From Octopus bimaculoides (taxonomy: Eukaryota), in contig NC_068983.1 of NCBI RefSeq assembly GCF_001194135.2, positions 84,660,338-84,724,337 of the forward strand: a DNA stretch of 64,000 nucleotides, given 5' to 3'. The notes below the pieces were generated by a model. The model ran no database searches, had not been told where the DNA came from, and saw only the letters and a program-made list of their open reading frames with translations. This document shows, piece after piece, positions 1-40,500 of this stretch. Position numbers and translations under genes: made by a program. Position 1 is the first letter of the stretch; every line of letters begins with the position of its first letter.

Positions 1-326
1 CATATATATAAACAAATACTCATACATAAAGACAGAAGCTGAATTTACTCTTTAAAGTAAAGTCGTCATCCTTGTACAATTACTGGATTATATGCAAATC
101 ACAGTTCTATCCTCTTCCAGCAGTTCTACTCTCATATCTGGGACACTACTTCCAATACTGATAATTAAGTTCTGGACTCCGTCTTCACCTTATTAAAAGT
201 TTCATCCGTCTGATAGTTAAGTGTTCACTGGCAATAGTATATAGGCATTGAAACATCGGTGTGCTGTTCATTTCACTCTGTCTCATGTGCTTAAGATACT
301 ATGTTTTCTGAACATTCTGATTATAT

Positions 327-404
<78 letters not shown>

Positions 405-1303: not shown

Positions 1304-1353
<50 letters not shown>

Positions 1354-3879
1354 GAAATAACACCTTTTTTCCCCCCTTTAACTCTCTTCTGTTACTTTTT
1401 CTACATCAAACAGTTCACATTTATTTTCTTTCTCTTCTCTTTATTCACTACAGACATTCCTACGTTCACAGATGCTTCTTAAAATTAAGAAAGTAAAAAA
1501 CAAAAAACAAAACAAAAGCAAAACGCAAATAAACGAAAAACATACGAAAACAAGCAAAGAACTCTTTTAGTCTATGTAATTATATTAAAAAAAATCTAAC
1601 GAATTAATTTATGCAGCCAAGTGATAAACCTCGCCCAAATTCTTTGACTATTCTATTTTCAATCATTTACCTTCTGAACAATTACTTTGTAAAGCAATAT
1701 AAGAAATAATTTCACAATATTTGATATCACTAACATTGAGAATGTAGCCTCAAGATATTATTTCAAAATGGTTTGAACCAATCCCATTTATTGTACATGT
1801 CTATATACATACACTCGCATACACATGCATACACACTCGCACACATGCATTTATAATCTCTAGAACACACACGCATGCTTCAACAGAACAAACTATTTAA
1901 AATTTATTTCAATATTTGATACTATCAATTAATTTTTTTCTTTTGCAATTCGTTTAACCTTCCCACTGTGAGATCTGTGATCTCATGGTAAGACAAGTCA
2001 ACGAAGTTAATTTAATGATTGTATTAAGCTCTAAGCTTTCAAACACAGGCAATATGTAATTCCTTTCTAAGTAATTAACTGCTGATAAGAGATCTGTTAT
2101 ATTTGTTGTACCATTATTTTTCTCAGTCGACATTTGTTTTCACAAATATTTTTCAACGTGTAATGATTTCTTACATTACATTAAACATATAATAAATACG
2201 AATAACACAAATGAAAATAATGTCCAAAGGTCTCTTTTGAAACAGAGAAAATTAAAAGAAAGTTTAAAACGTAAAGGAAAAAAAAAAGGCATGGATACTT
2301 TGAAAAAGTAATTAACTACATTCTTTTATTAATGTTAGGAAACTTTCTAATCTTGTTACTAAAATCACATCTCATCTGAAAAAGTTGTTTATCGAAGACA
2401 ACTGTGGTCTTGAAGATAACTATGGTCGGGTTCACTATGGTCATGAGAAAGTGAGAGAAAAATATGTGTTATAGTACAAAATTTGTTCAATGACAAATTA
2501 AATTTTGGCCGACTCTTGCTAAAGACAACTTCAAATTGCAGAAAATGAGGCCATTCCTTATAAATAAACATTTTTCACCGAAAATACTTTTAATTCTTAT
2601 GAAGGGTGTAAAAACAGCCACATATTTGATTGCTTAGTAATGTTCTTATTTCTGAAAATATTTTTCGAAGAGTAAAAAACAAAAAAAAAAAAACAATTGA
2701 ATTTTGGACGGTTTTAACCTATATCATATTTTTTGCTTTATCAGATAAACACATGAATATATCGTTGATAGACTGGGGAAACCAAATTTTGCAATTGATG
2801 CTTTCAAGCTTTAAGTAGATGTAAAAAAAATAAATCAGTTATCAACTATCGATTCTACGTGTATTATCTTTCATCGATTGATCATCGTGTTTTATCTGAA
2901 AATATTACACTATAAATAATATTATAATTCTATAATGGGTGCAAGTCCGACTTGCCTGCTCGAAGCAATTCTGTCACAAAACAGTGTATCAAGCTGCATA
3001 TATTGCACTATCACTATAAAAGATGTATACAACGAAGCCAAAATATCCAAAGATCACCTAGGGGCAGAATTTTACAGCCATAGTCTGGCCTAATAAGAAC
3101 ATATCTTACAATTACATATCTATCAACAGTATAACCATAATACCAAGTCATTGTTTAACTTATCTCGATGTGCTAAGATGTAAGTACTAAATTCCGAGAA
3201 ATGTCACTACTCACTTTGCCTCCAGTTTCAAAAATACCCATTGACACAAGACAAGCTTAGGAGGTAAAATAACCTGATTGTCATACTATCGCACAAAATA
3301 AAACTTAGTAGACACATTAAGTGACATATTCCTAAACTGAAACATGCTATAAAATACTGAATCTATGGGCTATAGCAAATCATTCCATCATTTAATTCCT
3401 TGCAATGAATCTACTGACTCAAAACTTCGGAAGATAATTTAATGATATATTTACTGCTAGCGCATCTCTATGACTTCGTTGTTATCTAATTGGCAGATTC
3501 GTTTATTCATTTTAGAATCCATTTTGGAGCAAAAAATATATCAGTCAGGCGCTCCCAGTTGCTTTAAATCCACTCGATTCATTTGATTCTTTCCCTTTCG
3601 TTACATTTATTCTTTTTCATCTGCTATATCTCGTACTTCATCTCCAGAAAGCAACTCAAAAGATCCTTTTCTTTGTGTTTCGGGTACAAAAATTTAAGGA
3701 GCACCTAAGATTAATGCGGTTTATTTGAAGTTCGAAAAGGTGTTTCTTCTTCGAGACCGTCCGTAAAAGCTTTGCTAGCTTCTTCAGTAACAGCAGATAC
3801 TTTTTATAGATTTTACATGTGGTGCAAGATGGGCCTAGAGCAAATTCCACTTGATCTTTTGTCAATATAATGACACAGG

Positions 3880-6039: not shown

Positions 6040-6290
6040 AAATAAGAATTTCTAACTTCCGGTCAGTCATTGTTATGATCGGCCATTATTATGATTGACC
6101 GTTGACTGAACACTATTCAATTTTTTTTCTTCGTGTTTTTCTCCTTGTCTCCGTATTCTTTCTGTTGAAGAGCGTAGCTCGAAACGTCAAAGACTTTCCG
6201 CATTCCCGAGCGTCATACTAATATATACTTTTGTTATTTACACCACCTGTCCTCGTCTGTTGTTATTATTTGTATATTCTCCCATATATA
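6040..6290 (+). mobile_element. Penelope-type terminal-repeat remnant carrying a minimal hammerhead
   Basis: Contains the hammerhead motif at 6157-6193 in a T-rich repeat ending at a (TA)n/gap; the Penelope assignment is inferred from the ribozyme type. Confidence 0.45.
6157..6193 (+). ncRNA. Minimal type I hammerhead ribozyme motif, one core substitution
   Basis: tcttt-CUGUUGA-a-GAGC gua GCUC-GAAACGUC-aaaga: 5-bp stem I, 4-bp stem II, palindromic ACGU stem III, GUC site; position 6 is U rather than A. Confidence 0.6.
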
Positions 6291-7797
6291 TATATATATA
6301 NNNNNNNNNNNNNNNNNNNNNNNNNNNNNNNNNNNNNNNNNNNNNNNNNNNNNNNNNNNNNNNNNNNNNNNNNNNNNNNNNNNNNNNNNNNNNNNNNNNN
6401 NNNNNNNNNNNNNNNNNNNNNNNNNNNNNNNNNNNNNNNNNNNNNNNNNNNNNNNNNNNNNNNNNNNNNNNNNNNNNNNNNNNNNNNNNNNNNNNNNNNN
6501 NNNNNNNNNNNNNNNNNNNNNNNNNNNNNNNNNATATATATATTACATATGTATATACCACACACACACATAAATAAAACGAGATAAGATAAGAGAAATA
6601 TCTCTGAGTGGTCAGTGGCATGTATTTGAGAAATTAATTTAATAATAATTGAATTGAATTAAATATTAATTTAATTTGATTATTGAATTTAATATTTTAA
6701 TTAAGTTATTAAGTATGTTATTTTAGAATCTGAGCATATTAAATAACTTACAAGACATTTCGCTTTTTTATTGAAATTATCTCCGCTTCCAGAGAGGATA
6801 GGCAAATTGCTTGGTAGCAATTGGCGCCGCCTCTAAATGAAAATGGAAGGTAATCACAAGGATAAAAATTCTCCAAAACAGACATGCCATTAAGGAAAAT
6901 AGTCTAATTGTTGCAAAATGAGAAGATAACTGTGGACGCAGGTTTCTGCATTAATTGGTGTCATCAGTACAGCAATTGTTTTACTTTATGTTCAGCAGAC
7001 GAAACACTTAGGCATACAGAAAAAAGAACACAGTAATGGCATAAGTCACTTGCATGAATTAAACAAAAATGTGCAAAAAATATATAATGCAATGTGGCCA
7101 GTGCATGTATTTGAACATACACACGAACTCACACTCATAGATACAAACATACACACACACATTTATATGATCGAAGGGAGACAATTCTGGTGATTCTAAT
7201 AAGATTGGGGTTATCTCCATTTGCGTGACACGAAATATATAAATATACATAGGTATTTATTAGAAGTTGTGTACATGGTTATGTGTATACCGAATGGCGT
7301 TCCTTTAAATTAAAAGCTGACATCCATTTGATAAATAGATATTGATAAAATAAATATTGTCAAGTTGAAATAAGTCAAGTTGGAACGGGAGCCCTAGCAC
7401 GGCCGCAGTTTTATAATCGAAGCGAGTAAAGCGATGAAATAATAATAAAAAATCTGGCCTTAAAGCATATTGATATCAAATAATGGTCACTAAAACACTA
7501 AGGTCGATGCACCCAACTATATATACTCCCGTAATAATTGGCTTTGTGCCGGTGATAAAGATATCAGTATCACATAGTGATTAATATTGATAGCAATTAT
7601 CTGAAGTATGATATGAATGTTGTCAGATTTCCAATTCTGTAAATAGCACTGACATTTGTATAATAAATAGGAAAAAGAGAGTCGAGATTATCTGGGGTTG
7701 GTAGGATACGTAAAAACAAACTACCGTACGAAAGGGTAGTGTCTCCCATGACCAAGATACTTAACCTTGCTGTTTCAACAGAGCTTTTAAATGAGTA

Positions 7798-7839: not shown

Positions 7840-8399
7840 GGCTAGATAAATATACAGGCGAAAGCGAAACGCACTCTGTACATTTCACAGTGTCTGTATA
7901 CACATTACCTGAGAACGGCAGGGAAGCTATATACTTAGAAAGTGTTGAATATGTTTATGCTGTTGGGTTTAGGTACTCAAAAAAGACTGAGAAATAATAA
8001 AACATTCTCCAAGAAATACCGTATTTAATAGAAGTTTCACGTGAACATTTGTAATTCGGTTCTAAGAGCAATTTGGCCACTCGGTGATGTTTAACATCTT
8101 TTAACGATGTACTCTAAGCCATATTAGTACAACCCACCATCCACACACATACAAGCACACACAAACACTCACATACACACACGCACACGCACACACACAC
8201 ACATAAATACACACTCACACACACACATACACGCACGCACATGTTGGGCTTGTTCGGATGCCTTCTTATAGGAAGCAAGGATCCAAACGATAAGCGTTTT
8301 TCTGTGTTCTGTGTAACTTGAAGTATTGTGAGTCTAAGTCCAATGTTAATACAAAAAGCAAAATATAAATATACTGTGAACTCTTTTCTTTTGTTTGTC

Positions 8400-8404
8400 T
8401 TATC

Positions 8405-8473
<69 letters not shown>

Positions 8474-8714
8474 NNNNNNNNNNNNNNNNNNNNNNNNNNN
8501 NNNNNNNNNNNNNNNNNNNNNNNNNNNNNNNNNNNNNNNNNNNNNNNNNNNNNNNNNNNNNNNNNNNNNNNNNNNNNNNNNNNNNNNNNNNNNNNNNNNN
8601 NNNNNNNNNNNNNNNNNNNNNNNNNNNNNNNNNNNNNNNNNNNNNNNNNNNNNNNNNNNNNNNNNNNNNNNNNNNNNNNNNNNNNNNNNNNNNNNNNNNN
8701 NNNNNNNNNNNNNN

Positions 8715-8805
<91 letters not shown>

Positions 8806-8883
8806 ATGTATGTATGTATGTATGTACGTCTGTCCATCCATCCATCCATCCATCCATCCATCCATCCATCCATCCATCCATCC

Positions 8884-8948
<65 letters not shown>
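8400..8948. repeat. Compound (TATC)/(TGTC)/(TATG)/(CATC) microsatellite around a gap
   Basis: Direct reading. Confidence 0.95.
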
Positions 8949-9162
8949 CACTGGGTTCCCGTGTAGCTTCCGTCTACACACAAGAAGACACTTATTCGAA
9001 ATGCTACACAATGAGATTGAACATGGAACATAAATGCCTCTTGTAAGCCAAATGCAATGCAGAATCATGTTAATTGGCACTGTGTACAAACACATATTTG
9101 GACACAATGTATAAATGCATGCCATTAAATGCATATGTTTATCGTATATATCGCTTATCAAG

Positions 9163-17535: not shown

Positions 17536-19480
17536 TATTCGCTATATTTCTCCAGGTAAGATGTGGAAATTTCAATTAATTCAAGTAATGAAGTTCTGTT
17601 GTTGCTGTTGTTGTTGTACAGCATTCAGAATATCAGCCCTCAAGTTATTTATCTAACTTAATATCATTGGTTCCTTTGAGTTATTTCCCATAGCTCATTT
17701 TTTCTAATTAGATGAATTCGAAAGCTTCGACGAACTCTAAGGTTTCTTCCTTTAGGAACACAATTGTAAAACACAAGCAATTCACAAACGTGTATGGCAT
17801 CCGGCTGTCGTTGTAACCCTTTTTCAATAAAGCTTTAGGACTTGCCAGTAAATATTTTTTGCATATTGATGATTTAAACGTTATAATGAAAAGAGTGTCA
17901 GGTATGGTTAACATAATATTTAACTGCTGATCAAAAGATGATGTAGAAGCTCTCATTGTGTGGATCAAAATCATTCGAACTTTGACTTTTTTATAGCGAA
18001 ATTTGTGATTTTGGATAGGTTCGTATGCGGTGGGAATTTAGTTACGCAGACCAGTATCAGTGCCCTCGGATTGTTTTAAAACTTCTTTTAGGTATAGTTC
18101 ATCCGGGACTACCTTATCCTATAACCCCACTCATATTTCTTAAGACAGTAGGGTCGTATTTTGAGAGTTTTTAGGTCGCTGTTTCTAGCAGGTTGTGTGA
18201 CCGCATACAGGTCCACTTTGCTTCACATAGGGGTGATTGTTTTTTGTACGTATGTATATGCGTCTCTATATGATATTACTAGTAAAAGTGTGTATAGATA
18301 TGAGTGTGTGTTAGTGCGTATATGAATTTGCATGTTCTATTCAACTTAACCGCTAGAAGTTATGTTTGTTATGAAAGGAGTTTATTGTTAACAACTTGTA
18401 GTTATTAGGTCCTTGTTAACTGTTTGCTGGTAATCGCCGGTAATGGTTTGTTATTAACAACATGTTTAACTGCATGTTGATTTCTTGTGTACACTGTTGT
18501 TGCTGTTCTCGTGCCTCAGATCAGCTCTCATCAAGTAGATCTCCGATCAAAGATGTTTTCAGCCTTGACCCTCCATTTCTTTTCCAAGTACAATGTCCCC
18601 GGACTTTATTACTCTACTTGTCCTATTTTTAGATCGTAGGCTATGCTGTGAGGTTTTGGCTATTTTTTTAAAAGTCCAACGATATAAGGCTCATTGAATC
18701 AAATTGATACTCGTAATTAATTTTTGCTAATACCTTGTTGGAAATAGTTTCTTAATTTTTATTAATAGTTCATGATATTTTAGACACCAATTATACAAGT
18801 ACTAGTGGTAATCAAGAAAGTAAGTTTCAGGCAAGTACGTGTGCGATCTGATTCACTATACCCTCCACCCACCCATACACACCATATCTTAAATTTCTGG
18901 GTTACTTTAAAAACTATTTTATACAGCTTTTTTTTTGTTAATAATTCTATGGTACTAGTATCTTATTAATAGCCAACTGTTTAACTGAAACCATAAGATG
19001 TTTCACTGTTTATTGTTCGGGCTATCATTGATCTGATTAAAATTTCAAGTGGACACGATTTCTTTGACTTTAACAAAATATGTCACGATATACTTCTCAC
19101 CAAGAGCTGATCTCGGCTCTTTAACAACCATGTGGCGAACACTAAAAGATTTCGAGACTAACTTTTGGCGTTCTTGCTCTGTAATTCGGTGTTGATTCCA
19201 AATTGTTGCTATTTAATTTTATTCCATTAATTAAACCCCTGAAGAGAAAAACGCCCCACAAATATCACAATATTCTACTTTATGTTTCCCATAATTCTTG
19301 TGCCTAATCGAAAAGGAATTAATAGTTTTATTGTCCCTACGTTCCTAGCAAGCCAAGTTCACAGAGCATTGTGAAAATGACAATTAATAGGTAGTTTATT
19401 TTCTCATTGAAATATGAAAAAATTTTAATGAATCTTATTTTATATTATGTAATAATCTTTCTTTGATAAAATGTTCTAAA

Positions 19481-19501
19481 TAGATTTTTCATGTCTTTCA
19501 G
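19481..19501 (+). other. 3' splice acceptor of the giant exon (exon starts 19502)
   Basis: tagatttttcatgtctttcAG immediately precedes the switch from AT-rich intron-like DNA to exon-like composition. Confidence 0.65.
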
Positions 19502-19740
19502 ATATTCACCTTTTGGTCTGTACAAGATGACATCAGTGGTAAAAAGACATTTGTTCGTTGGCGATTCGCCACTCACAAATGAGTGAAAACACCAACTCAG
19601 CTCACATACCCGCTTCACATCGCTTATCACCATCTTGCTTATCACCACCTTCATCTTTGGATAATCCAGTCCACGCTACCTCTGACCCGCACTCATCTTT
19701 ATGCAGCATTGCTCACACATCATCCGAAACTGCACTCACT

Positions 19741-22700
19741 ATGGGCAATCAACTTAGCGGAGATGGAAGTTTGAAAAGGAAAAGCAAGAAGAAAAATAAA
19801 AACAAAAACGACGAAAAAAGCAAAAGTGAAACCACTTCAGTACTAGATGAAACTGTTGTCGGTGCGTTTGGTGGATCATCTGTCGATGATACCAGTTCCC
19901 CCAGTAAACGACCGGCCCAGAGCAAGTCTCCTCGGCCTGTAAGGTCGACTTATGATAATGTTAATCAACATGGCTCCAATTCGAACTTATGCTCAAATTC
20001 AGGTCTTTACACTAGTGACCTCTATTTGGACACGGTTAGTCGGCTGGATGTCAGCATGACTACTAGTCAAATGGAAACAACTCCGAGAAATGAAAGATCT
20101 TATCGGTTTGATACTCAGTTAGCTGATGATGTATCGTTTAGTGAAATATCCTTTAATGAATCGGGTTTCATTACACCAGCTTTGAGTACACCTCAAGTGA
20201 GACGTAACGAATTACAACAAATAAAAACCACGACAGACAGTGTCAGCGAATTGGGGAAGGAAATAGAAAGGACAATTTTCGAAAGATTATCAGCTGACGG
20301 GAAGTCGGATGGTAGCAAAATAAAATCCGCAGAAACTCCTCCTCTTCCTAGTAAGCAGGATGCTGAAGAAAATGTTGGTCATGGTGTTGATGAAAAATCA
20401 AAACGACTGGAATACATGAATGAAGGAAAGGCACAAACCGAAGAAAAATGTGCTGTCAGTCAAACTGACATGAAAGCACCCGAAGATAACAGTACTGGTC
20501 TGTCGACTTGTCAAGAACTTACAGCCCCTACTCCCAGTGAAGAAGAGATTTGGTCAAATGACAACAGTAAAGACAAGGAGAAATCTTCTGAAATGATCAA
20601 CAAAGCCGACTGGGAATTGATGGAGAAAGAAAGTAAAATATCAGTTACCGACAATACAACCACCGACACCGAAGAACTGACTGAAGTATCCCAAAGAGAA
20701 GCTCCTGAAAAAGCAGAGCATTCAAAAATAGAGCCGAATCAGAATCATTCAAGCTCTGATGAAACTTTTCAGAACGATTTCGAGCAGGTGAAATCACACA
20801 TTAATGAAGACGTTAAGGTCTCACTCAAAGATAGCGATTATGATGCGCCTGAAAGAGAGGGTGTTAAATCAGAGCAAAATGGGACTGTCGATAAAAATGT
20901 TTGCCCAGAGACTCCAGAACAAGAACAAAAGCTAATACCACCTCCCGATGTTGCTGCAAATCAGAAAGTGGAGGAAATTGTAATGGAGGAACCAGTGCCA
21001 AAAAGCGCCGACGATGAAATTAAACAAGTTAAACAGTCAGTAAATCAATGTTTAAATGAGAAAGAAGTCGAAACAAAGATGATTATCGATGATAAAGCTC
21101 AATTAACTGAAAACTATGATGAAAGTACTCTTTCAAATAAAACCGAAAACGTATGTGAAGCTGAGAAATGTTCTTTGAAGAATATCCAAGAAACCGCTGC
21201 TGCTGTAATCGCAACGAAACCTTCGATCCCTGACGAAATCTTGACCATCTCCGAAGCTGTCCCAGTTGTAAAAAATACATCAGTTAAAGAACTGGAACCT
21301 GTTTGCGAAAAAATTATAGAGTCTTCAAGTGCTTCTTTTGCAGAGCGATCAAAGATTCTAGTTCATCATCCTGTTTTAAGTAATGACCAAGAAAAGGAAA
21401 CCGAACGAATCAAGACCAGTTGCGATGAGAGCTCGAAAAAGTATATTCATGAACCAGACGTAGAAGCAAACAGTATCAAAAGTGAATCCGATAAACATTC
21501 TAAAGACCCGGCTACACAAGAAATAGAAGAAATTCCTCAGGGAGCTATTTTGGAAACCGAAAGTAGTTTAGAATGTTCTGTCACTCAAACAAGTGATACA
21601 ACTGATGATAAAAAAGAAACCTCAGAAAACGAACAAAATATTTCGAAAATCAAAACAAAAAAAGGACGCAAAAGAAAAAGAAAGAAAAAATCGAGTTTAG
21701 GAAACGAAAGTTCGGCAAATGCTTCTGCGAGTGAGAGCCAAAGTGTTAGCGAAGTGACAGAAATAGAGGATAACTGTGATCTAGCTATCTCTAGATCCAG
21801 AGACAGTGATCTCACAAAAGAGGATGAAGAGAACGGTAATGAAATAAAATCTGTTGCTAGCACCCCTGATAGTGACAGCCCCGTATTTCTGCATCAATCC
21901 TCTGTCATAGAAAATACTAATTATTTAAAGGACGAAAGCTCAACATCAGATAAGTCAAACACTGTATCTAGTAGTGAAATTCAGAAAAAAGAACAAGCAA
22001 ATCAGAAGGACATCGATTCAAAACCACATCCTTTTGTAGACGTAAGTTGTTCAGTTGGAGCGTTGCATTCAACCACTGATATTGTGAGTGATGAATCTAC
22101 TCCCACGAATGAACGTCAGAATGAAATAAGAGCTTTCTATATTCCAAATAAAGAACAGAAAATTAAGTCAGATTCTTCACATGGAGAAGGAACCAAAGAC
22201 GACAATAAACGACTTAATGACCAAGTAGAAAACGTTCATACTACCAACGAAAGGACAGAAAAAGAAGATCAACAACTGGAAGATGAAAGTAAAAATATTA
22301 GTCAACTGAATGTTCAGTGTGAAGATGAAAATGAAACACATCAATGTGAAGATGAAAACGAAAACGTGTTCGATAAAGATGAAGATGCAACTGTTGCTAT
22401 TCCACATTGTCGAAATGGGACCAAAAACATTGTTGAAGAAACTGTTAACCCAAGACTATCAACTGCCTCTGAAGAACTCAACGAAATTATGGAAAATTCA
22501 AATAAAGTTGAAAAGAGAAGTGATCAAAATCGGCCACATAGTTACCCTAAAGAAGGTGAAGATCTGCGGGACAGAAATGAAAACCACTCAGCAACTTCTC
22601 AGGTAAGTTTAGAATCAAATAACTCCAGTAAAAAGAATTACAAATCTGGTCATAAGTCTCTGACTGATATCGACCACAACTTACCGGAAACATTACCTGA

Positions 22701-23445
22701 ACTTGCTGATCTAAAGAACTTTCTCGATTACATAAAACTAGGGGAAGATCAAAAATTATCAGAATCACCTTTTCCTTATAAGTGTGAAACTAATCGCTCA
22801 TCTCCATCTGAAAACGCGAGTAGTCGGCGTCTTTCACGTATTTCGCCGGCAGTGACCGATAGATCCGTGACCGAATCCGATATTGATATTTCAGAACAAC
22901 GCGATGATATCAGTACAGACAGCAACATCTTCGCCGATGATGAAGATGAATCAGCCTCTGAATTACTTTTCACTAAAACTTACACAGAACCAGACAAAGG
23001 GGGAGAAGTGCTGGTCAGTTGTACAGTCGTTAATACAGCTGCTGATGATGACAGTGATGACTTTTGGGCAGAGCATTCGGCGAGTGAAGAAGTTTACAGA
23101 CAAATACAAAGCTCTACCAAGGTCGTAACTACAGTTTTTGACAATGCTCGCCTACAAATGCAGGACATTCATACACATCTACAAAATCTCCGTTTACAAA
23201 TGGAGAACCTTCAAGAATCATTGGACAATGCCTCTATTTTTAGCCATGAGTACTACCCTGCCGACGATACTCCCGAGTCGTCCCAAGATTTCTATCCTTT
23301 AGACAAAGGATTCATTGTTTCACAAGAATATTTCCCGAAGCACATTGCATCGGTGACAACCGAAGAATATTCTCCTGTGGAGATTGGACCCGTATTAACT
23401 GAAGAATATTATTCATCACATTTTGGTAAACCACCATTTTTGTAA
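19741..23445 (+). CDS. Giant single-exon ORF, 1234 aa acidic low-complexity protein; candidate myristoylated scaffold (AKAP/MARCKS-like architecture), orthologue unknown
   Basis: Uninterrupted frame 19558-23445 in AT-rich, repeat-free DNA; an in-frame TAA at 19540-19542 bounds it upstream. ATG 19741 has strong context (actATGG) and gives MGNQLS; the upstream in-frame ATG 19579 (caaATGA) is weak. E/D/S/K/T-rich composition. Confidence 0.88.
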   Translation: MGNQLSGDGSLKRKSKKKNKNKNDEKSKSETTSVLDETVVGAFGGSSVDDTSSPSKRPAQSKSPRPVRSTYDNVNQHGSNSNLCSNSGLYTSDLYLDTVSRLDVSMTTSQMETTPRNERSYRFDTQLADDVSFSEISFNESGFITPALSTPQVRRNELQQIKTTTDSVSELGKEIERTIFERLSADGKSDGSKIKSAETPPLPSKQDAEENVGHGVDEKSKRLEYMNEGKAQTEEKCAVSQTDMKAPEDNSTGLSTCQELTAPTPSEEEIWSNDNSKDKEKSSEMINKADWELMEKESKISVTDNTTTDTEELTEVSQREAPEKAEHSKIEPNQNHSSSDETFQNDFEQVKSHINEDVKVSLKDSDYDAPEREGVKSEQNGTVDKNVCPETPEQEQKLIPPPDVAANQKVEEIVMEEPVPKSADDEIKQVKQSVNQCLNEKEVETKMIIDDKAQLTENYDESTLSNKTENVCEAEKCSLKNIQETAAAVIATKPSIPDEILTISEAVPVVKNTSVKELEPVCEKIIESSSASFAERSKILVHHPVLSNDQEKETERIKTSCDESSKKYIHEPDVEANSIKSESDKHSKDPATQEIEEIPQGAILETESSLECSVTQTSDTTDDKKETSENEQNISKIKTKKGRKRKRKKKSSLGNESSANASASESQSVSEVTEIEDNCDLAISRSRDSDLTKEDEENGNEIKSVASTPDSDSPVFLHQSSVIENTNYLKDESSTSDKSNTVSSSEIQKKEQANQKDIDSKPHPFVDVSCSVGALHSTTDIVSDESTPTNERQNEIRAFYIPNKEQKIKSDSSHGEGTKDDNKRLNDQVENVHTTNERTEKEDQQLEDESKNISQLNVQCEDENETHQCEDENENVFDKDEDATVAIPHCRNGTKNIVEETVNPRLSTASEELNEIMENSNKVEKRSDQNRPHSYPKEGEDLRDRNENHSATSQVSLESNNSSKKNYKSGHKSLTDIDHNLPETLPELADLKNFLDYIKLGEDQKLSESPFPYKCETNRSSPSENASSRRLSRISPAVTDRSVTESDIDISEQRDDISTDSNIFADDEDESASELLFTKTYTEPDKGGEVLVSCTVVNTAADDDSDDFWAEHSASEEVYRQIQSSTKVVTTVFDNARLQMQDIHTHLQNLRLQMENLQESLDNASIFSHEYYPADDTPESSQDFYPLDKGFIVSQEYFPKHIASVTTEEYSPVEIGPVLTEEYYSSHFGKPPFL
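22600..22608 (+). other. Internal consensus 5' splice donor within the giant ORF (phase 0, after ...ATSQ)
   Basis: CAG|GTAAGT, perfect consensus; CAG is an in-frame codon. Confidence 0.5.
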
Positions 23446-23579
23446 TATATATGTATGTATACACATATATGTAATATATATATATGTATGTATACACATA
23501 TACATACATGCAAACATGCATACACGCATCGTTTTGAAAGAGGTATCGAAGCTTTCATGCACATAATAAGCGGTATCAA

Positions 23580-23585
23580 AATAAA
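23580..23585 (+). promoter_or_regulatory. Candidate polyadenylation signal of the giant exon
   Basis: AATAAA 135 nt after the stop; TG-rich catgttttgtt about 55 nt downstream. Confidence 0.5.
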
Positions 23586-23731
23586 GATGACACAAAAATA
23601 GTCTCAAGTGATGTAGACAATATTTAAATGATCATTGCCATGTTTTGTTAAACTATATATCTTAGACTAGGCAGTTTAGGTTTTGTTGTTCGTTCTTTAT
23701 ACTTGATTGACCACTGTCCTACTCTCTCTAG

Positions 23732-23764
23732 AACCTGAAGACACCTGAACTTGAACTGTAAATG
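23732..23764 (+). other. Candidate 33-nt micro-exon ending in ATG
   Basis: Acceptor ccactgtcctactctctctAG, donor ATG|GTAAGT; stops in all three frames before the terminal ATG. Confidence 0.55.
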
Positions 23765-24559
23765 GTAAGTTCTCGTCAAATAGTTTTTATGCGACTCAAG
23801 AGTAAAACAAAACAGTTATACAAATTACAGCCACGAAGAAAATGATGATAATAATGACGAGGATGATGATAGTAAGAATAATGCAAGAGATAAAAATGAT
23901 AGTAGTATTATTTAAACCCCAGACTCCTAAAAAGGAACACGAATACAATAGGCACAAAGAAACAAAACGTGGGTTTGTTACATCAGTTTTGTTAAAACTA
24001 TAAAACGATTATAATGATAAGGAAAGTTATTGTGAAGAAAATGGTGGTAATTGTTAGAGAAATGATAATGATGAAGACAATAATCATTACATTTTTAGTA
24101 ATCAAGAAATATTTTAAATTGACTCAAAACTAATTACTAATTCGAAAATTTAGTACCTTAGATTAAGAAGACAAAAACACCTACAATATTGATAACGCGA
24201 TACACTCAAAACGAAATTCAGGGGAGATTTGTATAACTATAGTAAGTAACATAAGTAATTTAATATCCGTTTAAGTAGTAAGGCGGTAGGGTAGGCGGAA
24301 GTGAATTAGCATAGCCTTCATTCACTCTATGAAAAGTCAAGGGAAGTAATTGTTACTGACAGATTAAAAAAAATGGTGCAACTGGGGAAAAAACAATTTT
24401 GTTACATTTTCTATTAATGTGAATACAAATCACTCAAAAACGGAGACTATAAGCAACTATGATATCAACTAACAATGGACTACATTTTTATCCTAATTTA
24501 TTTGTATTTAGTTTTGTTTAGAATGCTTTTGGTTTTCTGAGAATTAGTTACATTTATAG

Positions 24560-25040
24560 ATTTCTGAGTAGAACATTGACGATAGCATTTTGCTAAATAC
24601 AACTTAGAATTTGGTTTTTGTAGTTCTTCTTTAATCCCCAAGTCACCCCTGATCAAGTGGACCCATGATCAAATTTATTCTAGTCATGACTATCCTGTAT
24701 TCTATTTCAAACAAAGTACACATACGATTACATTATTCAACGTAACCCTCTCTCTTTTTAAGAGATACAACGTAATACGAAGCATATTTGACTGTTATTT
24801 TAAGCAAATCGAGCAATCTTGTCAAGCTTCTCTTGCTGGTTCAGTGTACCCCTTGTTTTTTTAAGCATCTGGGTATTGTTGCATAGCTCCCGGTCAGCTC
24901 TGAGTGAGAAAACATGACCAAAGGCATTGCATCTGTGACCAACTCATTTTGCATTTCGCGACTTCATTTTTTAGTGTGTTATGCTTTATTTAAATCAAGA
25001 TTGTGGTTTGAAATAGATTTGGCTGCTATTTCTGTAAAAC
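24560..25040. repeat. Decayed interspersed repeat family B
   Basis: Motif gacctgctagaaatagcagccaaat or its reverse complement recurs near 12020, 16930, 18180, 25020, 25605, 34910 and 35410. Confidence 0.5.
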
Positions 25041-25289
25041 TCCTTCATTTACTCCATTGAGAATTTCCCGTTATATATATTTTCCCCATTATATAAATAT
25101 ATATATATAATGATTATATAATACATATAATCACATGTATATGTATATACATGCATATGCATAGCGTATCTGTGTGCGTGTGTATGAGTGAGAGAGTGTG
25201 AGAAAGAGAGAGTGAAAGAAAGAGAGAGAGTAGCTAGCTAGCTAGCTAGCTAGCTAGCTAGCTAGATAGATAGATAGATAGAGAGAGAG

Positions 25290-27297: not shown

Positions 27298-28257
27298 ATC
27301 TTTGTGGTTTTCGTCACCGTTTACAATTATCTTAAAAAGAAAAAAAAATTAATGTATCATATAGATGTAATTTTTGACGCTGAATCCAATTTGTCATTCA
27401 TTTGTTCAAGAAAAAATTTATATAAAANNNNNNNNNNNNNNNNNNNNNNNNNNNNNNNNNNNNNNNNNNNNNNNNNNNNNNNNNNNNNNNNNNNNNNNNN
27501 NNNNNNNNNNNNNNNNNNNNNNNNNNNNNNNNNNNNNNNNNNNNNNNNNNNNNNNNNNNNNNNNNNNNNNNNNNNNNNNNNNNNNNNNNNNNNNNNNNNN
27601 NNNNNNNNNNNNNNNNNNNNNNNNNNNNNNNNNCGAGCAAATTAAATAATTAAAAAAGCTAGGAACAAACAAACAAACCAACAGGAGTTGCTAGAAAAAA
27701 CAGTCAAGACATTGTTTGAAACAGACATTTATTAGTTAAAATATTCAAGAACGAAAGTTTGCAATACATACGCGCGCACACACACACGCCCCCCCCCACA
27801 CACAAGCATTCGCATAACTCTACACACAGGGTTGAAACGCCCCCACTACCAGTTTGCCACCACCCCTTCCTTCCTTATTCATCTATCACCCCTTCCTTTC
27901 TCATTCATATGTTGTGACGGAGAAAAACACAAGAGTATTATAATAGCAGAAGATTATCATTCTCCTTGTGCGCATACGCAACATCCTTGGTTACTATGGA
28001 AACAGAGTTTTTCGCCGCGGTGATCATCTTTGGTTACTATGGAAACAGAGTTTTTCGCCACGGTGATGTGTAAACTATTCGCTTCTGATCGGTTTAAATA
28101 CCCAAATTTTGCAAATTTTAAAAAGCTAATAACTTTTTAATTATGGATTTATCTGAAATATGAATTTCATTTTCTTAATTGTATAAAACTTAATCCATAT
28201 ACATAATTTGAAAACACTTGGAACAATATTGTAAACATTGACGAAAACCACAAAGAT
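27298..28257. mobile_element. Non-autonomous DNA transposon (MITE) with 30-bp TIRs, spanning a gap
   Basis: atctttgtggttttcgtcaccgtttacaat (27298-27327) versus the reverse complement of 28228-28257, 28/30 identical. Confidence 0.8.
27982..28067 (+). repeat. 43-bp tandem duplication, each unit carrying an RFX X-box
   Basis: catc(c/t)ttggttactatggaaacagagtttttcgcc(g/a)cggtgat x2; GTTACTATGGAAAC at 27990-28003 and 28033-28046. Confidence 0.85.
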
Positions 28258-29667: not shown

Positions 29668-29860
29668 TATTCTTTTATTCTTTTACTTGTTTCAGTCATT
29701 TGACTGCGGCCATGCTGGAGCACCGCCTTTAGTCAAGCAAATCGATCCCAGAGCTTATTCTTAGTAAGCCTAGTACCTATTCTATCGTGTCTTTTTTGCC
29801 GAACCGCTAAGCTACGGGGACGTAAACACACCAGCATCGGCTGTCAAGCGATGTTGGGGT
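29668..29860 (-). mobile_element. 3' half of a SINE (family C) with LINE-derived tail
   Basis: Minus strand ends ggcggtgctccagcatggccgcagtcaaatgactgaaacaagtaaaagaataaaagaat. Confidence 0.85.
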
Positions 29861-30534
29861 GACAAACACAGACACACAAACATGTACACACACATACATA
29901 CATACATACATACATACATACATANNNNNNNNNNNNNNNNNNNNNNNNNNNNNNNNNNNNNNNNNNNNNNNNNNNNNNNNNNNNNNNNNNNNNNNNNNNN
30001 NNNNNNNNNNNNNNNNNNNNNNNNNNNNNNNNNNNNNNNNNNNNNNNNNNNNNNNNNNNNNNNNNNNNNNNNNNNNNNNNNNNNNNNNNNNNNNNNNNNN
30101 NNNNNNNNNNNNNNNNNNNNNNNNNNNNNNNNNNNNNNNNNNNNNNNNNNNNNNNNNNNNNNNNNNNNNNNNNNNNNNNNNNNNNNNNNNNNNNNNNNNN
30201 NNNNNNNNNNNNNNNNNNNNNNNNNNNNNNNNNNNNNNNNNNNNNNNNNNNNNNNNNNNNNNNNNNNNNNNNNNNNNNNNNNNNNNNNNNNNNNNNNNNN
30301 NNNNNNNNNNNNNNNNNNNNNNNNNNNNNNNNNNNNNNNNNNNNNNNNNNNNNNNNNNNNNNNNNNNNNNNNNNNNNNNNNNNNNNNNNNNNNNNNNNNN
30401 NNNNNNNNNNNNNNNNNNNNNNNNNNNNNNNNNNNNNNNNATATATATATATATATATATATAGATAGATATATGCATATATCCATACATATATGTAAAT
30501 ACCTACATCTATATGTATACATACATGCATATAT

Positions 30535-31043
30535 GGGTACAAGTCATAAAAAAAGAAACGTTAAACACAATGAGAAACGAAAACATAAAAACGAAATCAG
30601 AAAACGAACTTTTTTCGAACAACGAAAAAAAAACAACAGAGAAACGAAACATGCAACATAAAGAGTATATGCTTTCGTCGGTTGTCCCTGTCCAAGTACT
30701 CCACGTTTCGAAGGCAAGGACAACACGTGACTTCGTTGGAACAGCCCTTCGCGCAAAGCAAATTAAAGAAAATTTGAAACTTTTTGCGGAGAGTGAAAGT
30801 ATTAACAAGTATAGGACAGTGAGAACAGACAGTAAAAACAATAGAAACAGTAAAAACAAGTAAAAGCGCGACAGTAAAAACAAACGGTGAGGGCTGTTGG
30901 GCCAAGCCGATAGAAAAATTATGAACGCTAAGTAGAAGAGACAGAGAAATTAACGTCTGTTCTTTAGGAAGGCCAGTGGGCAGTAAGAAGGAACCCCTTT
31001 CGTCACGTGTCAGCGACGAAAGGATCAAGGAAGAAGAGGAGGA

Positions 31044-37210: not shown

Positions 37211-38565
37211 TTTATATTCTTTCTGGAATTTGAACTTATCAAACTCTTTGTATCAACACTCCTATGGGTTAATTGTTGCTGATGCAGACCATCATCAGTT
37301 TCCTTGGCTTTCCGATTTTGCCCTATTGGTAACTAGCAAGATTCATTTAATAAAAATACTAGAGCCAACTTATATTCATTCTTCTCTCACAATGGAGTTG
37401 CCCGAGAGATACTCATTGAACTTTCAATGTATTTATACGATTTGTGTGTTTAGTTCCGAATGAACCCTCAATGAGTAACCTTATTATCTGGTTTTGATTC
37501 CTGATTCCTGTTACAACCATTTCACCTCATCTGTGTCACTAATGCTCTTGAAATAAATCGCCAGAAAATTATAAGTACCCCACTTTTCTCCCCTCCATAA
37601 ATGTTAGATTTTGTGTTTATAAGAATAGAATTTTCAGAGAAGAATTAATCAAGTTAGTTTCCTATAAGCTTCTCCAGATGCAGTTTCAAGATTCGAACAC
37701 AGAACTTCAAACCAAATTTCCTCACTTAAATTATACAATAACAGGGGGTTCTTGCAACGGAGTATTTTTTATTTAAGCTTTTGTAACTTTAATCGAATTG
37801 GGCCACAGAAAGGGTTAAACAAGTTTCTTATTTCGATGTGAGAGTTAAATACATTTAGAGTTATGAATATTTAGAGACATCAATGACTCAGCCTAGGATC
37901 CTTGAAATGTTGCCNNNNNNNNNNNNNNNNNNNNNNNNNNNNNNNNNNNNNNNNNNNNNNNNNNNNNNNNNNNNNNNNNNNNNNNNNNNNNNNNNNNNNN
38001 NNNNNNNNNNNNNNNNNNNNNNNNNNNNNNNNNNNNNNNNNNNNNNNNNNNNNNNNNNNNNNNNNNNNNNNNNNNNNNNNNNNNNNNNNNNNNNNNNNNN
38101 NNNNNNNNNNNNNNNNNNNNNNNNNNNNNNNNNNNNNNNNNNNNNNNNNNNNNNNNNNNNNNNNNNNNNNNNNNNNNNNNNNNNNNNNNNNNNNNNNNNN
38201 NNNNNNNNNNNNNNNNNNNNNNNNNNNNNNNNNNNNNNNNNNNNNNNNNNNNNNNNNNNNNNNNNNNNNNNNNNNNNNNNNNNNNNNNNNNNNNNNNNNN
38301 NNNNNNNNNCCAACACGATATCACTGATGTAACCGTGAAGTATTAGAAATCTTTGAAAATATTCTTCTAAAGATTTTATTCTCACATATATTCTTTCCTC
38401 TCCTTTGCGTCTATTTTTATCTCGCGAACTTCAAGGGTGTTGGTCGTAATACCTTTTGTAGTTGCGGATGCATAACTTGCGACACGTTCCATTTCTCCTC
38501 CTTTTCCCACTTCATCCATATTGGGGAAGAAACAATTTTCAAAAACAGGCACACACAACGACAGA

Positions 38566-38639: not shown

Positions 38640-40500
38640 ATCCCGGTTGACACGCGCGGGGAAACCTACAACAATATATAATAACAGTGTGTAACAATTT
38701 AACTCACGTTCTAAAGAAATCAACACCAACACCCAAGATGGCTTGCTTCTGACTAGTGTTTGATGGTTGCCCTATTTTTATAGGGGGTTGATGGCTCAAA
38801 TTAGCATATGTTTTGAATAGGATTTGATTAGTAGAGAATAGTCACATGATTAGTCTTAGAAATTTTTGGAGGTTCCCCGCTACGTCTCTGTGTTAGTATC
38901 AAGTGACGATGTTTGGCGTCGTAAGTTAAGGCTGACACGGTTGACTGAACATGTACAAACAATCAATGCTCTGTTTTCTGTCAAGTGTTTGTAGAGAATG
39001 AACACATGATTAGGTTTATAACCTTTTGTATGTTTTCCGCTACGTCTGTGTTAGTTTCCCATAACAGCATATTTTGCGCCTAAAAAGAAGGCCGACACGG
39101 ATGAGTGATCATGTTTATTTACAATCAAGGCACTCCAAATTTAATCTGTCTGGTGGGACAGTGGACAGGAGTCGTTTGTATTTAGTCCAGTGGCTAAAGT
39201 TTAGGTTGTTAACTGTGTAGGTTCCTCATGTTAAGTGGCAGAATGAGTTCGTGTGTGAATAGTTATTTGTGTCTGTACTCTGTTAAAGCTTGTTAAGTCT
39301 TGGTTTGTATTTTCGTATGAAAGTATTTTCTTTGTTTATCCGTGCTTCATCTGTGGTATTCTCTTAACATAGTTAAAGTGGGAATACTTGGAATTCAGGG
39401 GACTTATTTTTTGCACGTGCTTGTGTCCACTCAGTGGAATCTGTCTAGTACTGGGGTCTCGTATTTGTTGTCGGTGAATGGTCAGTTTATTTCTTAGAGT
39501 GAGCTTTGTTTGACCTATGTAATCTTCATTACATCCTTAACATTTTATAGCATATATCTAATTCCTTGAAGAACATGGAAGGTGATTTTTACAGTAAAAA
39601 TATGGCCTGATTAGCTGTTGGTGTAGGAATTGTAGAAGGTAATTTAGCATTTGTGAGGAATTTTTTGAGGTACATTGATTGTCTTTTACTTTTGATTATT
39701 TTGTATATTTCGAATGCTTGTTTCATTCTTGGGTCTTGTTTTAGTAATGGAATGTTCTGGTAGATAATATTGTAAACCTTTGTGTTTCTTGGGTTGTGTG
39801 TTGTAATAAAGGGTAGAGTATTGGATGTATCTGGAGCGTTTTCCGTAGGTCTTGGATATTTATTGCTTTGGCATGTTCTATTCCGTTGTCTATCAACATT
39901 AATTGATATTGTCTTTCAAGTAGCACTTGTTTTAGTTCCTGGAGTCTTTTATTGTGAGTTTCAGGGTTTGAGAAAATTGTGCAGATTCTTCTTGCTAGAT
40001 TAAAGGGAATATTATTCTTCGTGTGTTTGAGATGGCATGAGAAGTACAGTAGGTATTGTTTAGAATCTGTTTGTAGTGAATATCTGTTCCAATATTTTTA
40101 TCTCCTTTGATGATTAGTAAATCCAGGAATGGTAGCTGAGTTTTACTGTATTCCATGGTATAGTTAATATTATTGTTTATGCTGTTGATTAGCTTTTTGA
40201 AATCTATAAATTGTTCAAATGTGTGTGTCCAAAGGATTTGGCAGTCATCTAAGTAACGTTTCCAGTTTTCTAGTAGATATTTGTGGAAGTTCAAACCATA
40301 TTTCAATTTAGATTGTTCATATATCTGGACCTCCATGTATGCCATGACTAGATTTGCGTAAGTCGGAGCAACTTTCGTGCCCATCGCAGTACCAGATATT
40401 TGTTTGTTAATACTGCCATCGAAGTAAAAAAAGTTGTTTTCGAGGATAAAAGCCACGTTTTTCTATCTCAACTTTTTGAAAATCAGTGTAAACTGTGAAA
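38640..40500 (-). mobile_element. 5'-truncated Penelope-like element: RT, thumb and GIY-YIG end (stop at 39283-39285) plus 3' region
   Basis: QISGTAMGTKVAPTYANL, WKRYLDD, LPFLD, then after a frameshift TDSKQYLLYFSCH..NIPFNLARRIC and the C-terminal RINKENTFIRKYKPRLNKL*. Confidence 0.92.

What the first reader, a model, noticed from the sequence alone, without database searches (positions are those of the whole stretch)
23242..23445. Five cryptic 13-aa tyrosine repeats forming the C-terminal tail
Seen: SHEYYP-ADDTPES / SQDFYP-LDKGFIV / SQEYFP-KHIASVT / TEEYSP-VEIGPVL / TEEYYS, with an exact 39-nt period (23242, 23281, 23320, 23359, 23398). The core [ST]x[ED][YF][YFS]P is retained while the spacers have diverged completely, which suggests selection on the motif and spacing. 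Inference: a multivalent phosphotyrosine/SH2 or adaptor docking array (acidic residues before Tyr suit Src-family kinases; YSPV is also a YxxPhi motif).
Basis: partly seen in the sequence, partly recalled or inferred. Interest (0 to 1): 0.7.

Follow-up and report, generated by a model that had tools for sequence, protein, structure and literature searches.

The report
Fivefold aromatic motif tail, cephalopod protein
The five 13-residue repeats are real: a short acidic-aromatic peptide motif that other molluscs carry once at the end of an uncharacterised protein was multiplied to five copies in cephalopods and kept under selection, most likely as a multi-site docking tail, but it does not look like a classical phosphotyrosine/SH2 array.

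Summary
Window 23242-23442 encodes five in-register 13-residue units with core [ST]-x-[ED]-[YF]-[YFS]. The lag-13 self-score is +71 and 0 of 20,000 shuffles reach it. The motif occurs nowhere else in the 1,295-codon frame.

The tail ends an intronless gene (CDS 19741-23445) for a mostly disordered protein. It has a myristoylation-type MGNQLSG start with a polybasic patch, and a conserved C-terminal coiled coil. No Pfam, PDB or literature match exists.

Thirty homologues were found; every one that could be named is a mollusc. A cuttlefish-type orthologue keeps all five units (spacing 13/13/14/13; tail 73% identical, disordered body 16-47%). Between two close species the tail's dN/dS is about 0.06. 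Gastropods, a chiton and bivalves have one copy at the same position. Cephalopod tails are 52 residues (4 x 13) longer, so this is a tandem amplification of an ancestral motif.

AlphaFold2 models the tail as disordered. The best reading is a multivalent linear-motif docking array displayed on a coiled coil, with an unknown partner.

The SH2/phosphotyrosine reading is only partly supported. Y and F interchange, no register has Tyr in all five units, and the +1 to +3 residues match no SH2 class and are not conserved. KLC Y-acidic, FFAT, LIR and YxxPhi classes fail as explanations of the array.

The parts
19741..23445 (+). Coding sequence of the gene (1,234 codons plus stop), MGNQLSG... to ...GKPPFL*, with no intron
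   Evidence: The open frame runs 19558-23445. Contig L002 from a close relative is collinear with window 19088-25109 at 88.4% identity with no splice. Its called protein P0001 starts at MGNQLSG and ends at GKPPFL.
19741..19809 (+). MGNQLSGDGSLKRKSKKKNKNKN: N-myristoylation-type start (Met-Gly, Ser at position 6) followed by a polybasic patch; inferred membrane anchor
   Evidence: M-G-N is present at this position in the cephalopod, gastropod, chiton and bivalve homologues whose N-terminal sequence was read. In locus L001 a stop lies 8 codons upstream of MGN, so MGN is the first possible start there. Lipidation itself was not tested.
19579..19740 (+). In-frame upstream ATG (MSENTNSAH..., 54 codons): a possible alternative longer N-terminus, or 5' UTR
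   Evidence: The stretch is open in both close species and in the cuttlefish-type contig. The 13 nucleotide differences are spread 6/2/5 over the codon positions, with 7 amino-acid changes, so constraint is weak.
22597..22608 (+).
   Evidence: L002 is collinear across it, both close species encode SQVSLE there, and the frame downstream is under purifying selection.
22681..23079 (+). Conserved C-terminal region before the helix: LPETLPELADL..., RRLSRISP (basophilic-kinase-type sites), the acidic Ser/Asp cluster TESDIDISEQRDD..ADDEDE, LLFTKTYTEP..EVLVSCTVVN, and DSDDFWAE with a nearly invariant Trp
   Evidence: Alignment A1 shows 25 invariant and 13 nearly invariant columns across 15 molluscs. 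Identity to the cuttlefish type is 81-87%. There are no nonsynonymous changes between the two close species. AlphaFold2 confidence here is low.
23080..23244 (+). Long alpha-helix; its second half (23146-23223) is a heptad coiled coil
   Evidence: AlphaFold2 helix at residues 115-169 of window:22738-23442, with pLDDT up to 96. Hydrophobic residues are spaced 4,3,4,3,4,3,4 and coincide with the invariant M, I, L, L, M columns.
23242..23280 (+). Repeat unit 1, SHEYYPADDTPES; it sits where the single ancestral motif sits
   Evidence: The motif is 16 residues after the L[RK]xQM anchor, against 15-17 in gastropods and the chiton.
23281..23319 (+). Repeat unit 2, SQDFYPLDKGFIV
   Evidence: The orthologous cuttlefish-type unit is SQEFYSLEKGLLV.
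23320..23358 (+). Repeat unit 3, SQEYFPKHIASVT
   Evidence: The orthologous unit SQEYFSRSKKAQVT is one residue longer.
23359..23397 (+). Repeat unit 4, TEEYSPVEIGPVL; the best conserved unit
   Evidence: It is 11 of 13 identical to the cuttlefish-type unit PEEYSPVDIGPVL (read from the alignment).
23398..23445 (+). Repeat unit 5 plus C-terminus, TEEYYSSHFGKPPFL, and the stop codon
   Evidence: The cuttlefish type has TEEYYSSTLGKPPLL. DNA identity to L002 is 97.5% with no indels up to the stop, then falls to 91, 90 and 83% with indels.
23446..25109 (+). Downstream sequence collinear with the relative's contig; probable 3' UTR, starting with a TA/CATA microsatellite
   Evidence: The contig ends fall in TA repeats, so the true mRNA end is not defined.

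Best explanation
Shown: the five units are a genuine, translated internal repeat at the C-terminus of an intronless gene. The protein is uncharacterised and largely disordered. It has a myristoylation-type MGN start with a polybasic patch, a conserved C-terminal region, and a heptad coiled coil that runs straight into the repeats. Every homologue that could be named is a mollusc. In gastropods, a chiton and bivalves the coiled coil is followed by one copy of an acidic-aromatic motif (hydrophobic-[ST]-P-[DE]-[YF]-x) and a short conserved end. In two deeply diverged cephalopods there are five copies and the tail is 52 residues (4 x 13) longer. Unit 1 sits at the ancestral position, and each unit's own spacer is conserved between the two cephalopods. 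The array therefore arose by tandem duplication of a 39-nt unit before those lineages split, and it has been kept by purifying selection.

Inferred: the tail is a disordered, multivalent docking array of short linear motifs. The coiled coil would present it in two or more copies on a membrane-anchored scaffold, which raises avidity for a partner that recognises an aromatic side chain in an acidic, Ser/Thr-flanked context. Because Y and F interchange, the ring rather than an obligatory phosphotyrosine is the core determinant. The invariant Ser/Thr three residues before the aromatic ([ST]-P in other molluscs) is the likeliest regulatory phosphosite. The partner is unknown.
For: The repeat is statistically real. 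The frame is read through and collinear in a relative's contigs. Five units are kept in the cuttlefish-type protein and in Acanthosepion pharaonis CAE1320306. Tail identity is 73%, against 16-47% for the disordered body. Tail omega is 0.064 against 0.45 for the body; octopus-to-cuttlefish dN is 0.25 against 0.79. Conservation drops after the stop codon. AlphaFold2 gives a confident helix followed by a low-confidence tail. The heptad positions are the invariant columns. Other molluscs have a single motif at the same distance from the anchor, and the length difference is 52 = 4 x 13. Y and F interchange within the array and across species. The [ST]-x-[ED] flank is conserved while the +1 to +3 residues are not.
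Against: No binding partner and no modification has been observed, so the mechanism is inferred from sequence alone. Heterobranch gastropods and a few bivalves lack the aromatic motif altogether, so it is dispensable in some lineages. Only two cephalopod lineages could be sampled (no squid, no nautilus). The tail dN/dS rests on 5 substitutions. The library type of the supporting contigs (RNA or DNA) is unknown. Similarity between the ancestral tails and individual units is weak when scored alone (local scores 13-25); the homology argument rests mainly on position and length.
Confidence: 0.55

Rival explanations
1. Phosphotyrosine docking array: a tyrosine kinase phosphorylates the Tyr residues, and the array recruits SH2 or PTB-domain proteins multivalently.
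For: Every unit holds at least one Tyr preceded by Glu or Asp, a context that suits many tyrosine kinases (own knowledge). The tail is disordered and accessible. A membrane-anchored scaffold is a typical setting. Seven of the protein's 23 Tyr lie in the last 67 residues.
Against: No register has Tyr in all five units (Y,F,Y,Y,Y and Y,Y,F,S,Y), in both cephalopods. F replaces Y in 5 single-copy orthologues. The +1 to +3 residues that set SH2 specificity are neither shared between units nor conserved between orthologues. No Grb2, PI3K, Crk, Src-type, ITIM or NPxY pattern occurs in the window's tail.
Confidence: 0.2
2. Aromatic 'sticker' array: evenly spaced aromatic pairs in an acidic disordered tail drive self-association or condensate formation of the scaffold, or fold back onto its own polybasic patches, rather than binding one dedicated partner domain.
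For: Aromatic pairs are spaced regularly. Y and F interchange. The tail is disordered and next to an oligomerising coiled coil. Two polybasic patches lie in the same protein, at 19741-19809 and 21652-21696.
Against: Each unit's spacer is individually conserved between orthologues (PVEIGPVL against PVDIGPVL), and the [ST]-x-[ED] flank is strict. That points to specific recognition rather than generic stickiness. The ancestral state is a single copy.
Confidence: 0.1
3. Phospho-FFAT-like motifs that bind the MSP domain of VAP proteins after Ser phosphorylation, tethering the membrane-anchored scaffold to the endoplasmic reticulum.
For: The core E-[FY]-[FY]-S occurs in unit 5 of both cephalopods and in units 2 and 3 of the cuttlefish type. 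The Phospho-FFAT definition allows S/T at core position 4 (PMC7705450).
Against: Core position 4 must be D/E or S/T, but in the window units 1-3 have Pro there, and unit 4 has no aromatic at core position 2. Position 5 is L, K or R in several units. The upstream acidic tract is short. The single-copy motifs of gastropods (EYSFE) and bivalves (DYFGL) do not fit.
Confidence: 0.07
4. Neutral leftover of a replication-slippage expansion with no function of its own.
For: Tandem duplications in disordered tails are common and often neutral (own knowledge).
Against: The array is kept in frame with five units in lineages whose synonymous sites are saturated in the rest of the gene and near 1.0 in the tail. 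Tail dN is a third of that of the protein's body. Omega is 0.064 between close species. Conservation decays right after the stop.
Confidence: 0.03

Closest known systems
Substrate/docking domains built of repeated Tyr motifs (for example the YxxP array of p130Cas/BCAR1)
   Same: Several short Tyr-containing motifs at roughly regular spacing, in a disordered region of a scaffold protein, giving multivalent binding.
   Different: Those arrays keep Tyr and a defined +3 residue that is read by SH2 domains. Here Y and F interchange, Pro sits at +2 and is not conserved, and the conserved residues lie N-terminal to the aromatic. There is no sequence homology.
Kinesin light chain 'Y-acidic' (JIP1, TorsinA) and 'W-acidic' cargo-adaptor motifs
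   Same: An aromatic residue flanked by acidic residues in a disordered segment of an adaptor. The protein also has a nearly invariant DSDDFWAE upstream.
   Different: Y-acidic binding needs the free C-terminal carboxylate two residues after the Tyr; amidation abolishes binding (PMC6214655). All five copies here are internal, and the last Tyr is 10 residues from the end. W-acidic motifs have the form L/M-[DE]-W-[DE]-[DE], which is only loosely matched.
FFAT and Phospho-FFAT motifs (VAP/MOSPD2 MSP-domain ligands)
   Same: An acidic residue followed by two aromatics (E-[FY]-[FY]). Unit 5 (EYYSS) fits core positions 1-5 of a Phospho-FFAT.
   Different: Position 4 is Pro in units 1-3 of the window. 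The array as a whole, and the ancestral single motifs, do not fit.
Multicopy linear-motif tails of endocytic adaptors (for example DPF/DPW or NPF arrays of Eps15 and epsin)
   Same: This is the best analogy for how it would work: low-affinity aromatic motifs repeated in a disordered tail, with avidity gained from copy number and oligomerisation.
   Different: The motif sequence differs, the partner is unknown, and the family is unrelated. Here the history of the copy number can be traced (one copy in other molluscs, five in cephalopods).

Membership tests
Internal tandem protein repeat | Self-similarity at a fixed period beyond what composition gives | tested here: met
   Lag-13 score +71, with 0 of 20,000 shuffles reaching it; DNA identity at lag 39 is 0.49 against 0.15-0.32.
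Phosphotyrosine/SH2 docking array | Tyr invariant at the acceptor position of every copy and in orthologues | tested here: not met
   The two registers read Y,F,Y,Y,Y and Y,Y,F,S,Y. F replaces Y in 5 single-copy orthologues.
Phosphotyrosine/SH2 docking array | Conserved +1 to +3 residues matching an SH2 specificity class | tested here: not met
   No pYxN, pYxxM, pYxxP, Src-type, ITIM or NPxY match in the window's tail, and the +1 to +3 residues differ between orthologous units. The patterns used come from my own knowledge.
Phosphotyrosine/SH2 docking array | Tyr residues are phosphorylated in vivo | not testable with these tools
   This needs phosphoproteomics or anti-pTyr blots of cephalopod tissue.
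KLC1 'Y-acidic' cargo motif | Tyr two residues from a free C-terminal carboxylate, with acidic flanks | tested here: not met
   The requirement comes from PMC6214655. There is no Y-x-[DE]-COOH; the protein ends in GKPPFL.
FFAT / Phospho-FFAT | Core E-F/Y-F/Y-(D/E or S/T)-small residue within an acidic tract | tested here: not met
   The definition comes from PMC7705450. In the window only unit 5 (EYYSS) fits, and units 1-3 have Pro at position 4. For unit 5 taken alone the test is inconclusive.
LC3-interacting region (LIR) | [WFY]-x-x-[LIV] after acidic residues, in every copy | tested here: not met
   Only units 2 and 4 match, and both have Pro at the second x position.
YxxPhi sorting signal | Y-x-x-bulky hydrophobic, in the cytosolic tail of a membrane protein | tested here: not met
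   Only unit 4 (YSPV) matches. No transmembrane segment was noticed on reading the sequence; this was not formally tested.
N-myristoylated proteins | Initiator Met followed by Gly2, with a small or hydroxyl residue at position 6 | tested here: met
   MGNQLS in the window. M-G-N is present in the homologues whose N-terminal sequence was read. A stop lies just upstream in L001. This is a pattern check only; lipid attachment was not tested, and an in-frame upstream ATG exists in the window.
Coiled coil | Heptad spacing of hydrophobic residues in a long helix | tested here: met
   AlphaFold2 helix with pLDDT up to 96. Spacing is 4,3,4,3,4,3,4, and the invariant columns fall on those positions. The oligomeric state was not tested.
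Any curated protein family (Pfam, PDB) | A significant profile or sequence match | tested here: not met
   Only sub-threshold coiled-coil noise (Aip3p/Bud6 17.5 bits against a cut-off of 27; THOC7 16.9 bits against 28.7). PDB sequence and profile searches found nothing significant.

The most novel reading that the evidence does not exclude
The motif hydrophobic-[ST]-x-[DE]-[YF]-[YFS] is a previously undescribed class of short linear motif with a dedicated, still unidentified reader domain in molluscs. Its fivefold amplification on a myristoylated, coiled-coil scaffold would then be a cephalopod innovation that rewired, through avidity, a membrane-proximal signalling or trafficking complex.
Probability: 0.3. 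Interest if true: 0.55.

Novelty: new variant of a known kind. Interest (0 to 1): 0.35.

Why it matters
This is a clean, datable example of how a multivalent docking tail arises. One linear motif, present across molluscan classes, was copied four more times in register in cephalopods and then frozen by selection, spacers included. It also points to an entirely uncharacterised protein family, seen here only in molluscs, with clear functional landmarks: a lipid-anchor-type start, polybasic patches, kinase-site clusters, a coiled coil and the motif tail. The single-copy and five-copy versions offer a natural experiment on how motif number affects binding. It does not bear on a long-standing open question, and arrays of linear motifs are a familiar principle, so the interest is moderate.

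Tried and rejected
1. Pfam on the whole frame and on six relatives gave only sub-threshold coiled-coil noise.
2. PDB searches by sequence and by profile found nothing; the haemagglutinin HA2 matches at E around 1 are coiled-coil chance.
3. The search for homologous proteins, with the C-terminal 280 residues and with the 15-sequence alignment, gave no hits. That index does not appear to hold this family. The exhaustive representative search did find it.
4. An exact look-up of the window's own protein found nothing on record.
5. Tandem Repeats Finder does not see the 39-nt repeat.
6. I considered that the repeat unit is the whole ancestral tail, with its terminal V-T-[DE] fused to the next E-Y, because MAFFT aligned VTE/VTD to LTEE. 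Pairwise scores are too weak to support this. The simpler reading, in which the ancestral L-[ST]-P-[DE]-Y corresponds to V-[ST]-x-E-Y, is preferred.
7. I suspected P0008 and P0009 might be nautilus. P0009 is Gigantopelta aegis, a gastropod.
8. I hoped the consistent contig lengths of about 6 kb would prove full-length mRNA, but the contig ends fall in TA microsatellites, so this cannot be claimed.
9. Literature searches for the run accessions and for the protein accessions gave no papers.
10. Fold search was not run, because the model is a single helix plus disorder and the matches would be meaningless.
11. KLC Y-acidic, FFAT, LIR, YxxPhi and the SH2 classes were rejected as explanations of the array.
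Full report
**1. Observation**

The window is AT-rich draft animal DNA with N gaps and many microsatellites. Its only large coding feature is an open frame of 1,295 codons on the + strand, 19558-23445.

The pattern [ST]x[ED][YF][YFS][PS] occurs five times in the whole frame, only here, and always 13 residues apart.

A test that does not depend on the chosen pattern agrees:
- The BLOSUM62 self-score of the tail is +71 at lag 13 and +55 at lag 26, and negative at every other lag from 1 to 30.
- None of 20,000 shuffles reached 71 at any lag.
- The tail has the strongest periodicity in the protein.
- At the DNA level, identity is 0.49 at lag 39, against 0.15-0.32 at other lags.
- The units share only 14-23 of 39 bases, and Tandem Repeats Finder misses them.

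The repeat is real, old and degenerate.

**2. The gene**

A 5.9-kb contig assembled from public sequencing runs of a close relative (L002; its protein P0001 is 99% identical in the C-terminal 280 residues) is collinear with window 19088-25109, at 88.4% identity and with no splice. The gene is therefore intronless over this span.

The donor-like CAG|GTAAGT at 22600-22608 is read through. It encodes Q-V-S in both species. I cannot tell whether those runs are RNA or DNA, and the contig ends fall in TA microsatellites. The case for translation therefore rests mainly on evolution:
- Between the two close species the tail has 4 synonymous and 1 nonsynonymous change (omega 0.064). The conserved C-terminal region has omega 0 and the disordered body 0.45.
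- DNA identity is 97.5% without indels up to the stop codon, then 91%, 90% and 83% with indels after it.

The protein most likely starts at MGNQLSG (19741). This is a Met-Gly start with Ser at position 6, followed by KRKSKKKNKNKN. By established knowledge of N-myristoyltransferase substrates, that is a myristoyl-plus-polybasic membrane anchor. M-G-N is present at this point in the homologues whose N-terminal sequence was read. In one gastropod locus a stop lies 8 codons upstream.

An in-frame upstream ATG (19579, MSEN...) is also open in cephalopods, but it is only weakly constrained.

**3. Family**

- Pfam, PDB by sequence, PDB by profile, and the literature give nothing.
- The exhaustive HMMER search found 30 representatives.
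- Those that carry names are all molluscs: a cuttlefish cluster (Acanthosepion pharaonis), Haliotis, Patella, Gigantopelta, Pomacea, Batillaria, Littorina, Nucella, Aplysia, Physella, Candidula, the chiton Liolophura, and the bivalves Sinanodonta, Pinctada and Mya.
- Their database names (mucin-2, futsch, serine-rich adhesin) are low-complexity artefacts.
- The shared architecture is an MGN start, a long divergent disordered body, and a conserved C-terminal region of about 190 residues with 25 invariant columns.
- AlphaFold2, run with this alignment, is confident about one element only: a helix at 23080-23244 with pLDDT up to 96.
- The second half of that helix has hydrophobic residues spaced 4,3,4,3,4,3,4, and these are the invariant M, I, L, L, M columns. 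It is a coiled coil.
- The tail that follows has pLDDT 46-64 and is predicted to be disordered.

**4. Origin of the repeats**

I measured from the anchor L[RK]xQM in the coiled coil:

| Group | Residues after the anchor | Acidic-aromatic motifs | Position of first motif |
|---|---|---|---|
| Non-cephalopods | 20-37 (28 in Haliotis and Patella) | at most one, typically L-[ST]-P-[DE]-[YF]-x | 15-17 in gastropods and the chiton; 21-25 in bivalves |
| The window, its close relative, and the cuttlefish type | 80-81 | five | 16 |

The difference, 80 - 28 = 52, is exactly four units of 13. Most non-cephalopods end in a conserved R-x-x-[VI]-T-[DE], which cephalopods lack.

Unit 1 therefore sits at the ancestral position, and four extra 39-nt units were added in tandem.

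The cuttlefish-type protein keeps all five units, with spacing 13/13/14/13. Each unit keeps its own spacer: LDKGFIV against LEKGLLV, and PVEIGPVL against PVDIGPVL. Unit 4 is 11 of 13 identical.

Between these two lineages synonymous sites are saturated outside the tail, and the disordered body is only 16-47% identical. The tail is 73% identical, with dN 0.25 against 0.79 for the body.

The amplification therefore predates the split of these two cephalopod lineages, and the array has been under purifying selection since. No squid or nautilus sequence could be reached with these tools.

**5. How it most likely works**

The anatomy is a membrane-anchor-type N-terminus, a long flexible body, an oligomerising coiled coil, and then a disordered tail with five conserved copies of a short motif. 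That is the anatomy of a multivalent linear-motif docking array, in which copy number and oligomerisation supply avidity. This step is inferred.

The sequences show directly which features are selected:
- a hydrophobic pair before each unit;
- Ser or Thr at -3;
- an acidic residue at -1;
- an aromatic residue followed by Y, F or S.

Tyr itself is not fixed. The two aromatic registers read Y,F,Y,Y,Y and Y,Y,F,S,Y in both cephalopods. In the single-copy motif F replaces Y in five species, even among caenogastropods: Pomacea and Batillaria have Y, Littorina and Nucella have F.

I therefore favour recognition of the aromatic ring in an acidic context. The conserved Ser/Thr ([ST]-P in other molluscs) would be the probable regulatory phosphosite. 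The partner is unknown.

**6. Comparison with known systems**

Partly supported as an analogy, because it too is multivalent docking. It is not supported as a mechanism: Tyr is not invariant, no SH2-class pattern is present, and the specificity-determining positions are not conserved.
- **Kinesin light chain Y-acidic motifs.** These require a free carboxylate two residues after the Tyr (PMC6214655). The requirement is not met.
- **FFAT and Phospho-FFAT motifs.** These require D/E or S/T at core position 4 (PMC7705450). Units 1-3 of the window have Pro there. Only unit 5 (EYYSS) fits, although the cuttlefish type has three fitting cores. This remains a minor rival.
- **LIR.** Two units fit.
- **YxxPhi.** One unit fits.
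- **Neutral slippage.** Contradicted by the conservation.

The closest working analogy is the multicopy aromatic-motif tails of endocytic adaptors. There is no homology to any of these families.

**7. Verdict**

The docking-array idea stands, but the phosphotyrosine/SH2 specifics are not supported.

What is new is the history (one copy in other molluscs, five in cephalopods), the orphan family seen so far only in molluscs, and a motif that fits none of the classes tested. The principle is familiar, so the interest is moderate.

Noticed in passing
window 19579-19740 (+); also L002, L005, L001: An in-frame ATG 54 codons upstream of MGNQ (MSENTNSAH...) is open in both close species. A similar 'MS[DE]...' extension of 49 to about 300 residues precedes the internal M-G-N in cuttlefish, Haliotis, Patella and bivalve predictions, while in L001 a stop lies 8 codons upstream of MGN. 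This could mean two alternative starts, with only the shorter product myristoylated. Constraint on the extension is weak (differences 6/2/5 by codon position).
   Followed up: partly
C-termini of P0003-P0023 (no counterpart in the window): Gastropods, the chiton and bivalves end in a conserved R-x-x-[VI]-T-[DE]-COOH (RPVTE, RKAVTD, KRLVTD). Cephalopods (GKPPFL) and heterobranch snails have lost it. From memory it resembles a basophilic-kinase site next to the C-terminus, of the kind that forms C-terminal (mode III) 14-3-3 sites.
   Followed up: no
window 21652-21696 (+): A second polybasic cluster, KTKKGRKRKRKKKSS, sits in the middle of the disordered body. Similar clusters are present in the cuttlefish type (KSKKDRKRKRKKAKR) and in gastropods. 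It could be a nuclear-localisation-like signal or a second membrane-binding patch.
   Followed up: no
window 23104-23145 and 22819-22866 (+): The first half of the conserved helix (STKVVTTVFDNA; SADAAGSAFQNA in Pomacea) fits, from memory, the degenerate amphipathic pattern of A-kinase-anchoring helices. Conserved RRxS-type sites (SSRRLSRISP) lie 80 residues upstream. This is only a lead and was not tested.
   Followed up: no
window 23044-23079 (+): DDDSDDFWAEHS holds a nearly invariant Trp in an acidic run across the family (FWED, FWAE, TWLSDE). It loosely resembles W-acidic kinesin-light-chain motifs, but AlphaFold2 gives no confident structure here.
   Followed up: partly
window 22597-22608 (+): A near-consensus splice donor (CAG|GTAAGT) lies inside the coding sequence and is read through in the relative's contigs. 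The matching part of the cuttlefish-type protein is not conserved.
   Followed up: yes
window about 22159-22360 (+): The second-strongest internal periodicity of the protein is lag 21 with score 54, in the acidic stretch around ...QLNVQCEDENETHQCEDENENVFDKDED.... It is probably a small local duplication.
   Followed up: no
window 39995-40456 (-): A 153-codon ORF with a YLDD motif gives a sub-threshold match to reverse transcriptase (RVT_1, E = 0.0018, 18.4 bits against a cut-off of 29.6). It is probably a decayed retroelement fragment.
   Followed up: partly
window 248-1482, 6231-6621, 8328-9033, 27304-27645, 29807-30661, 37883-38385, 49525-50337, 58517-58949: Runs of N (assembly gaps) flanked by CA/TG, TA, CTCT and similar microsatellites. 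They produce long spurious ORFs in every frame.
   Followed up: no
P0024-P0028 (Aplysia, Physella and other heterobranch-type sequences), P0013, P0019, P0030: These homologues keep the coiled coil but have no acidic-aromatic motif after it (for example LTLTPDNLS). The heterobranch-type sequences have also lost the V-T-[DE] end, so in that group the two tail features disappear together.
   Followed up: partly
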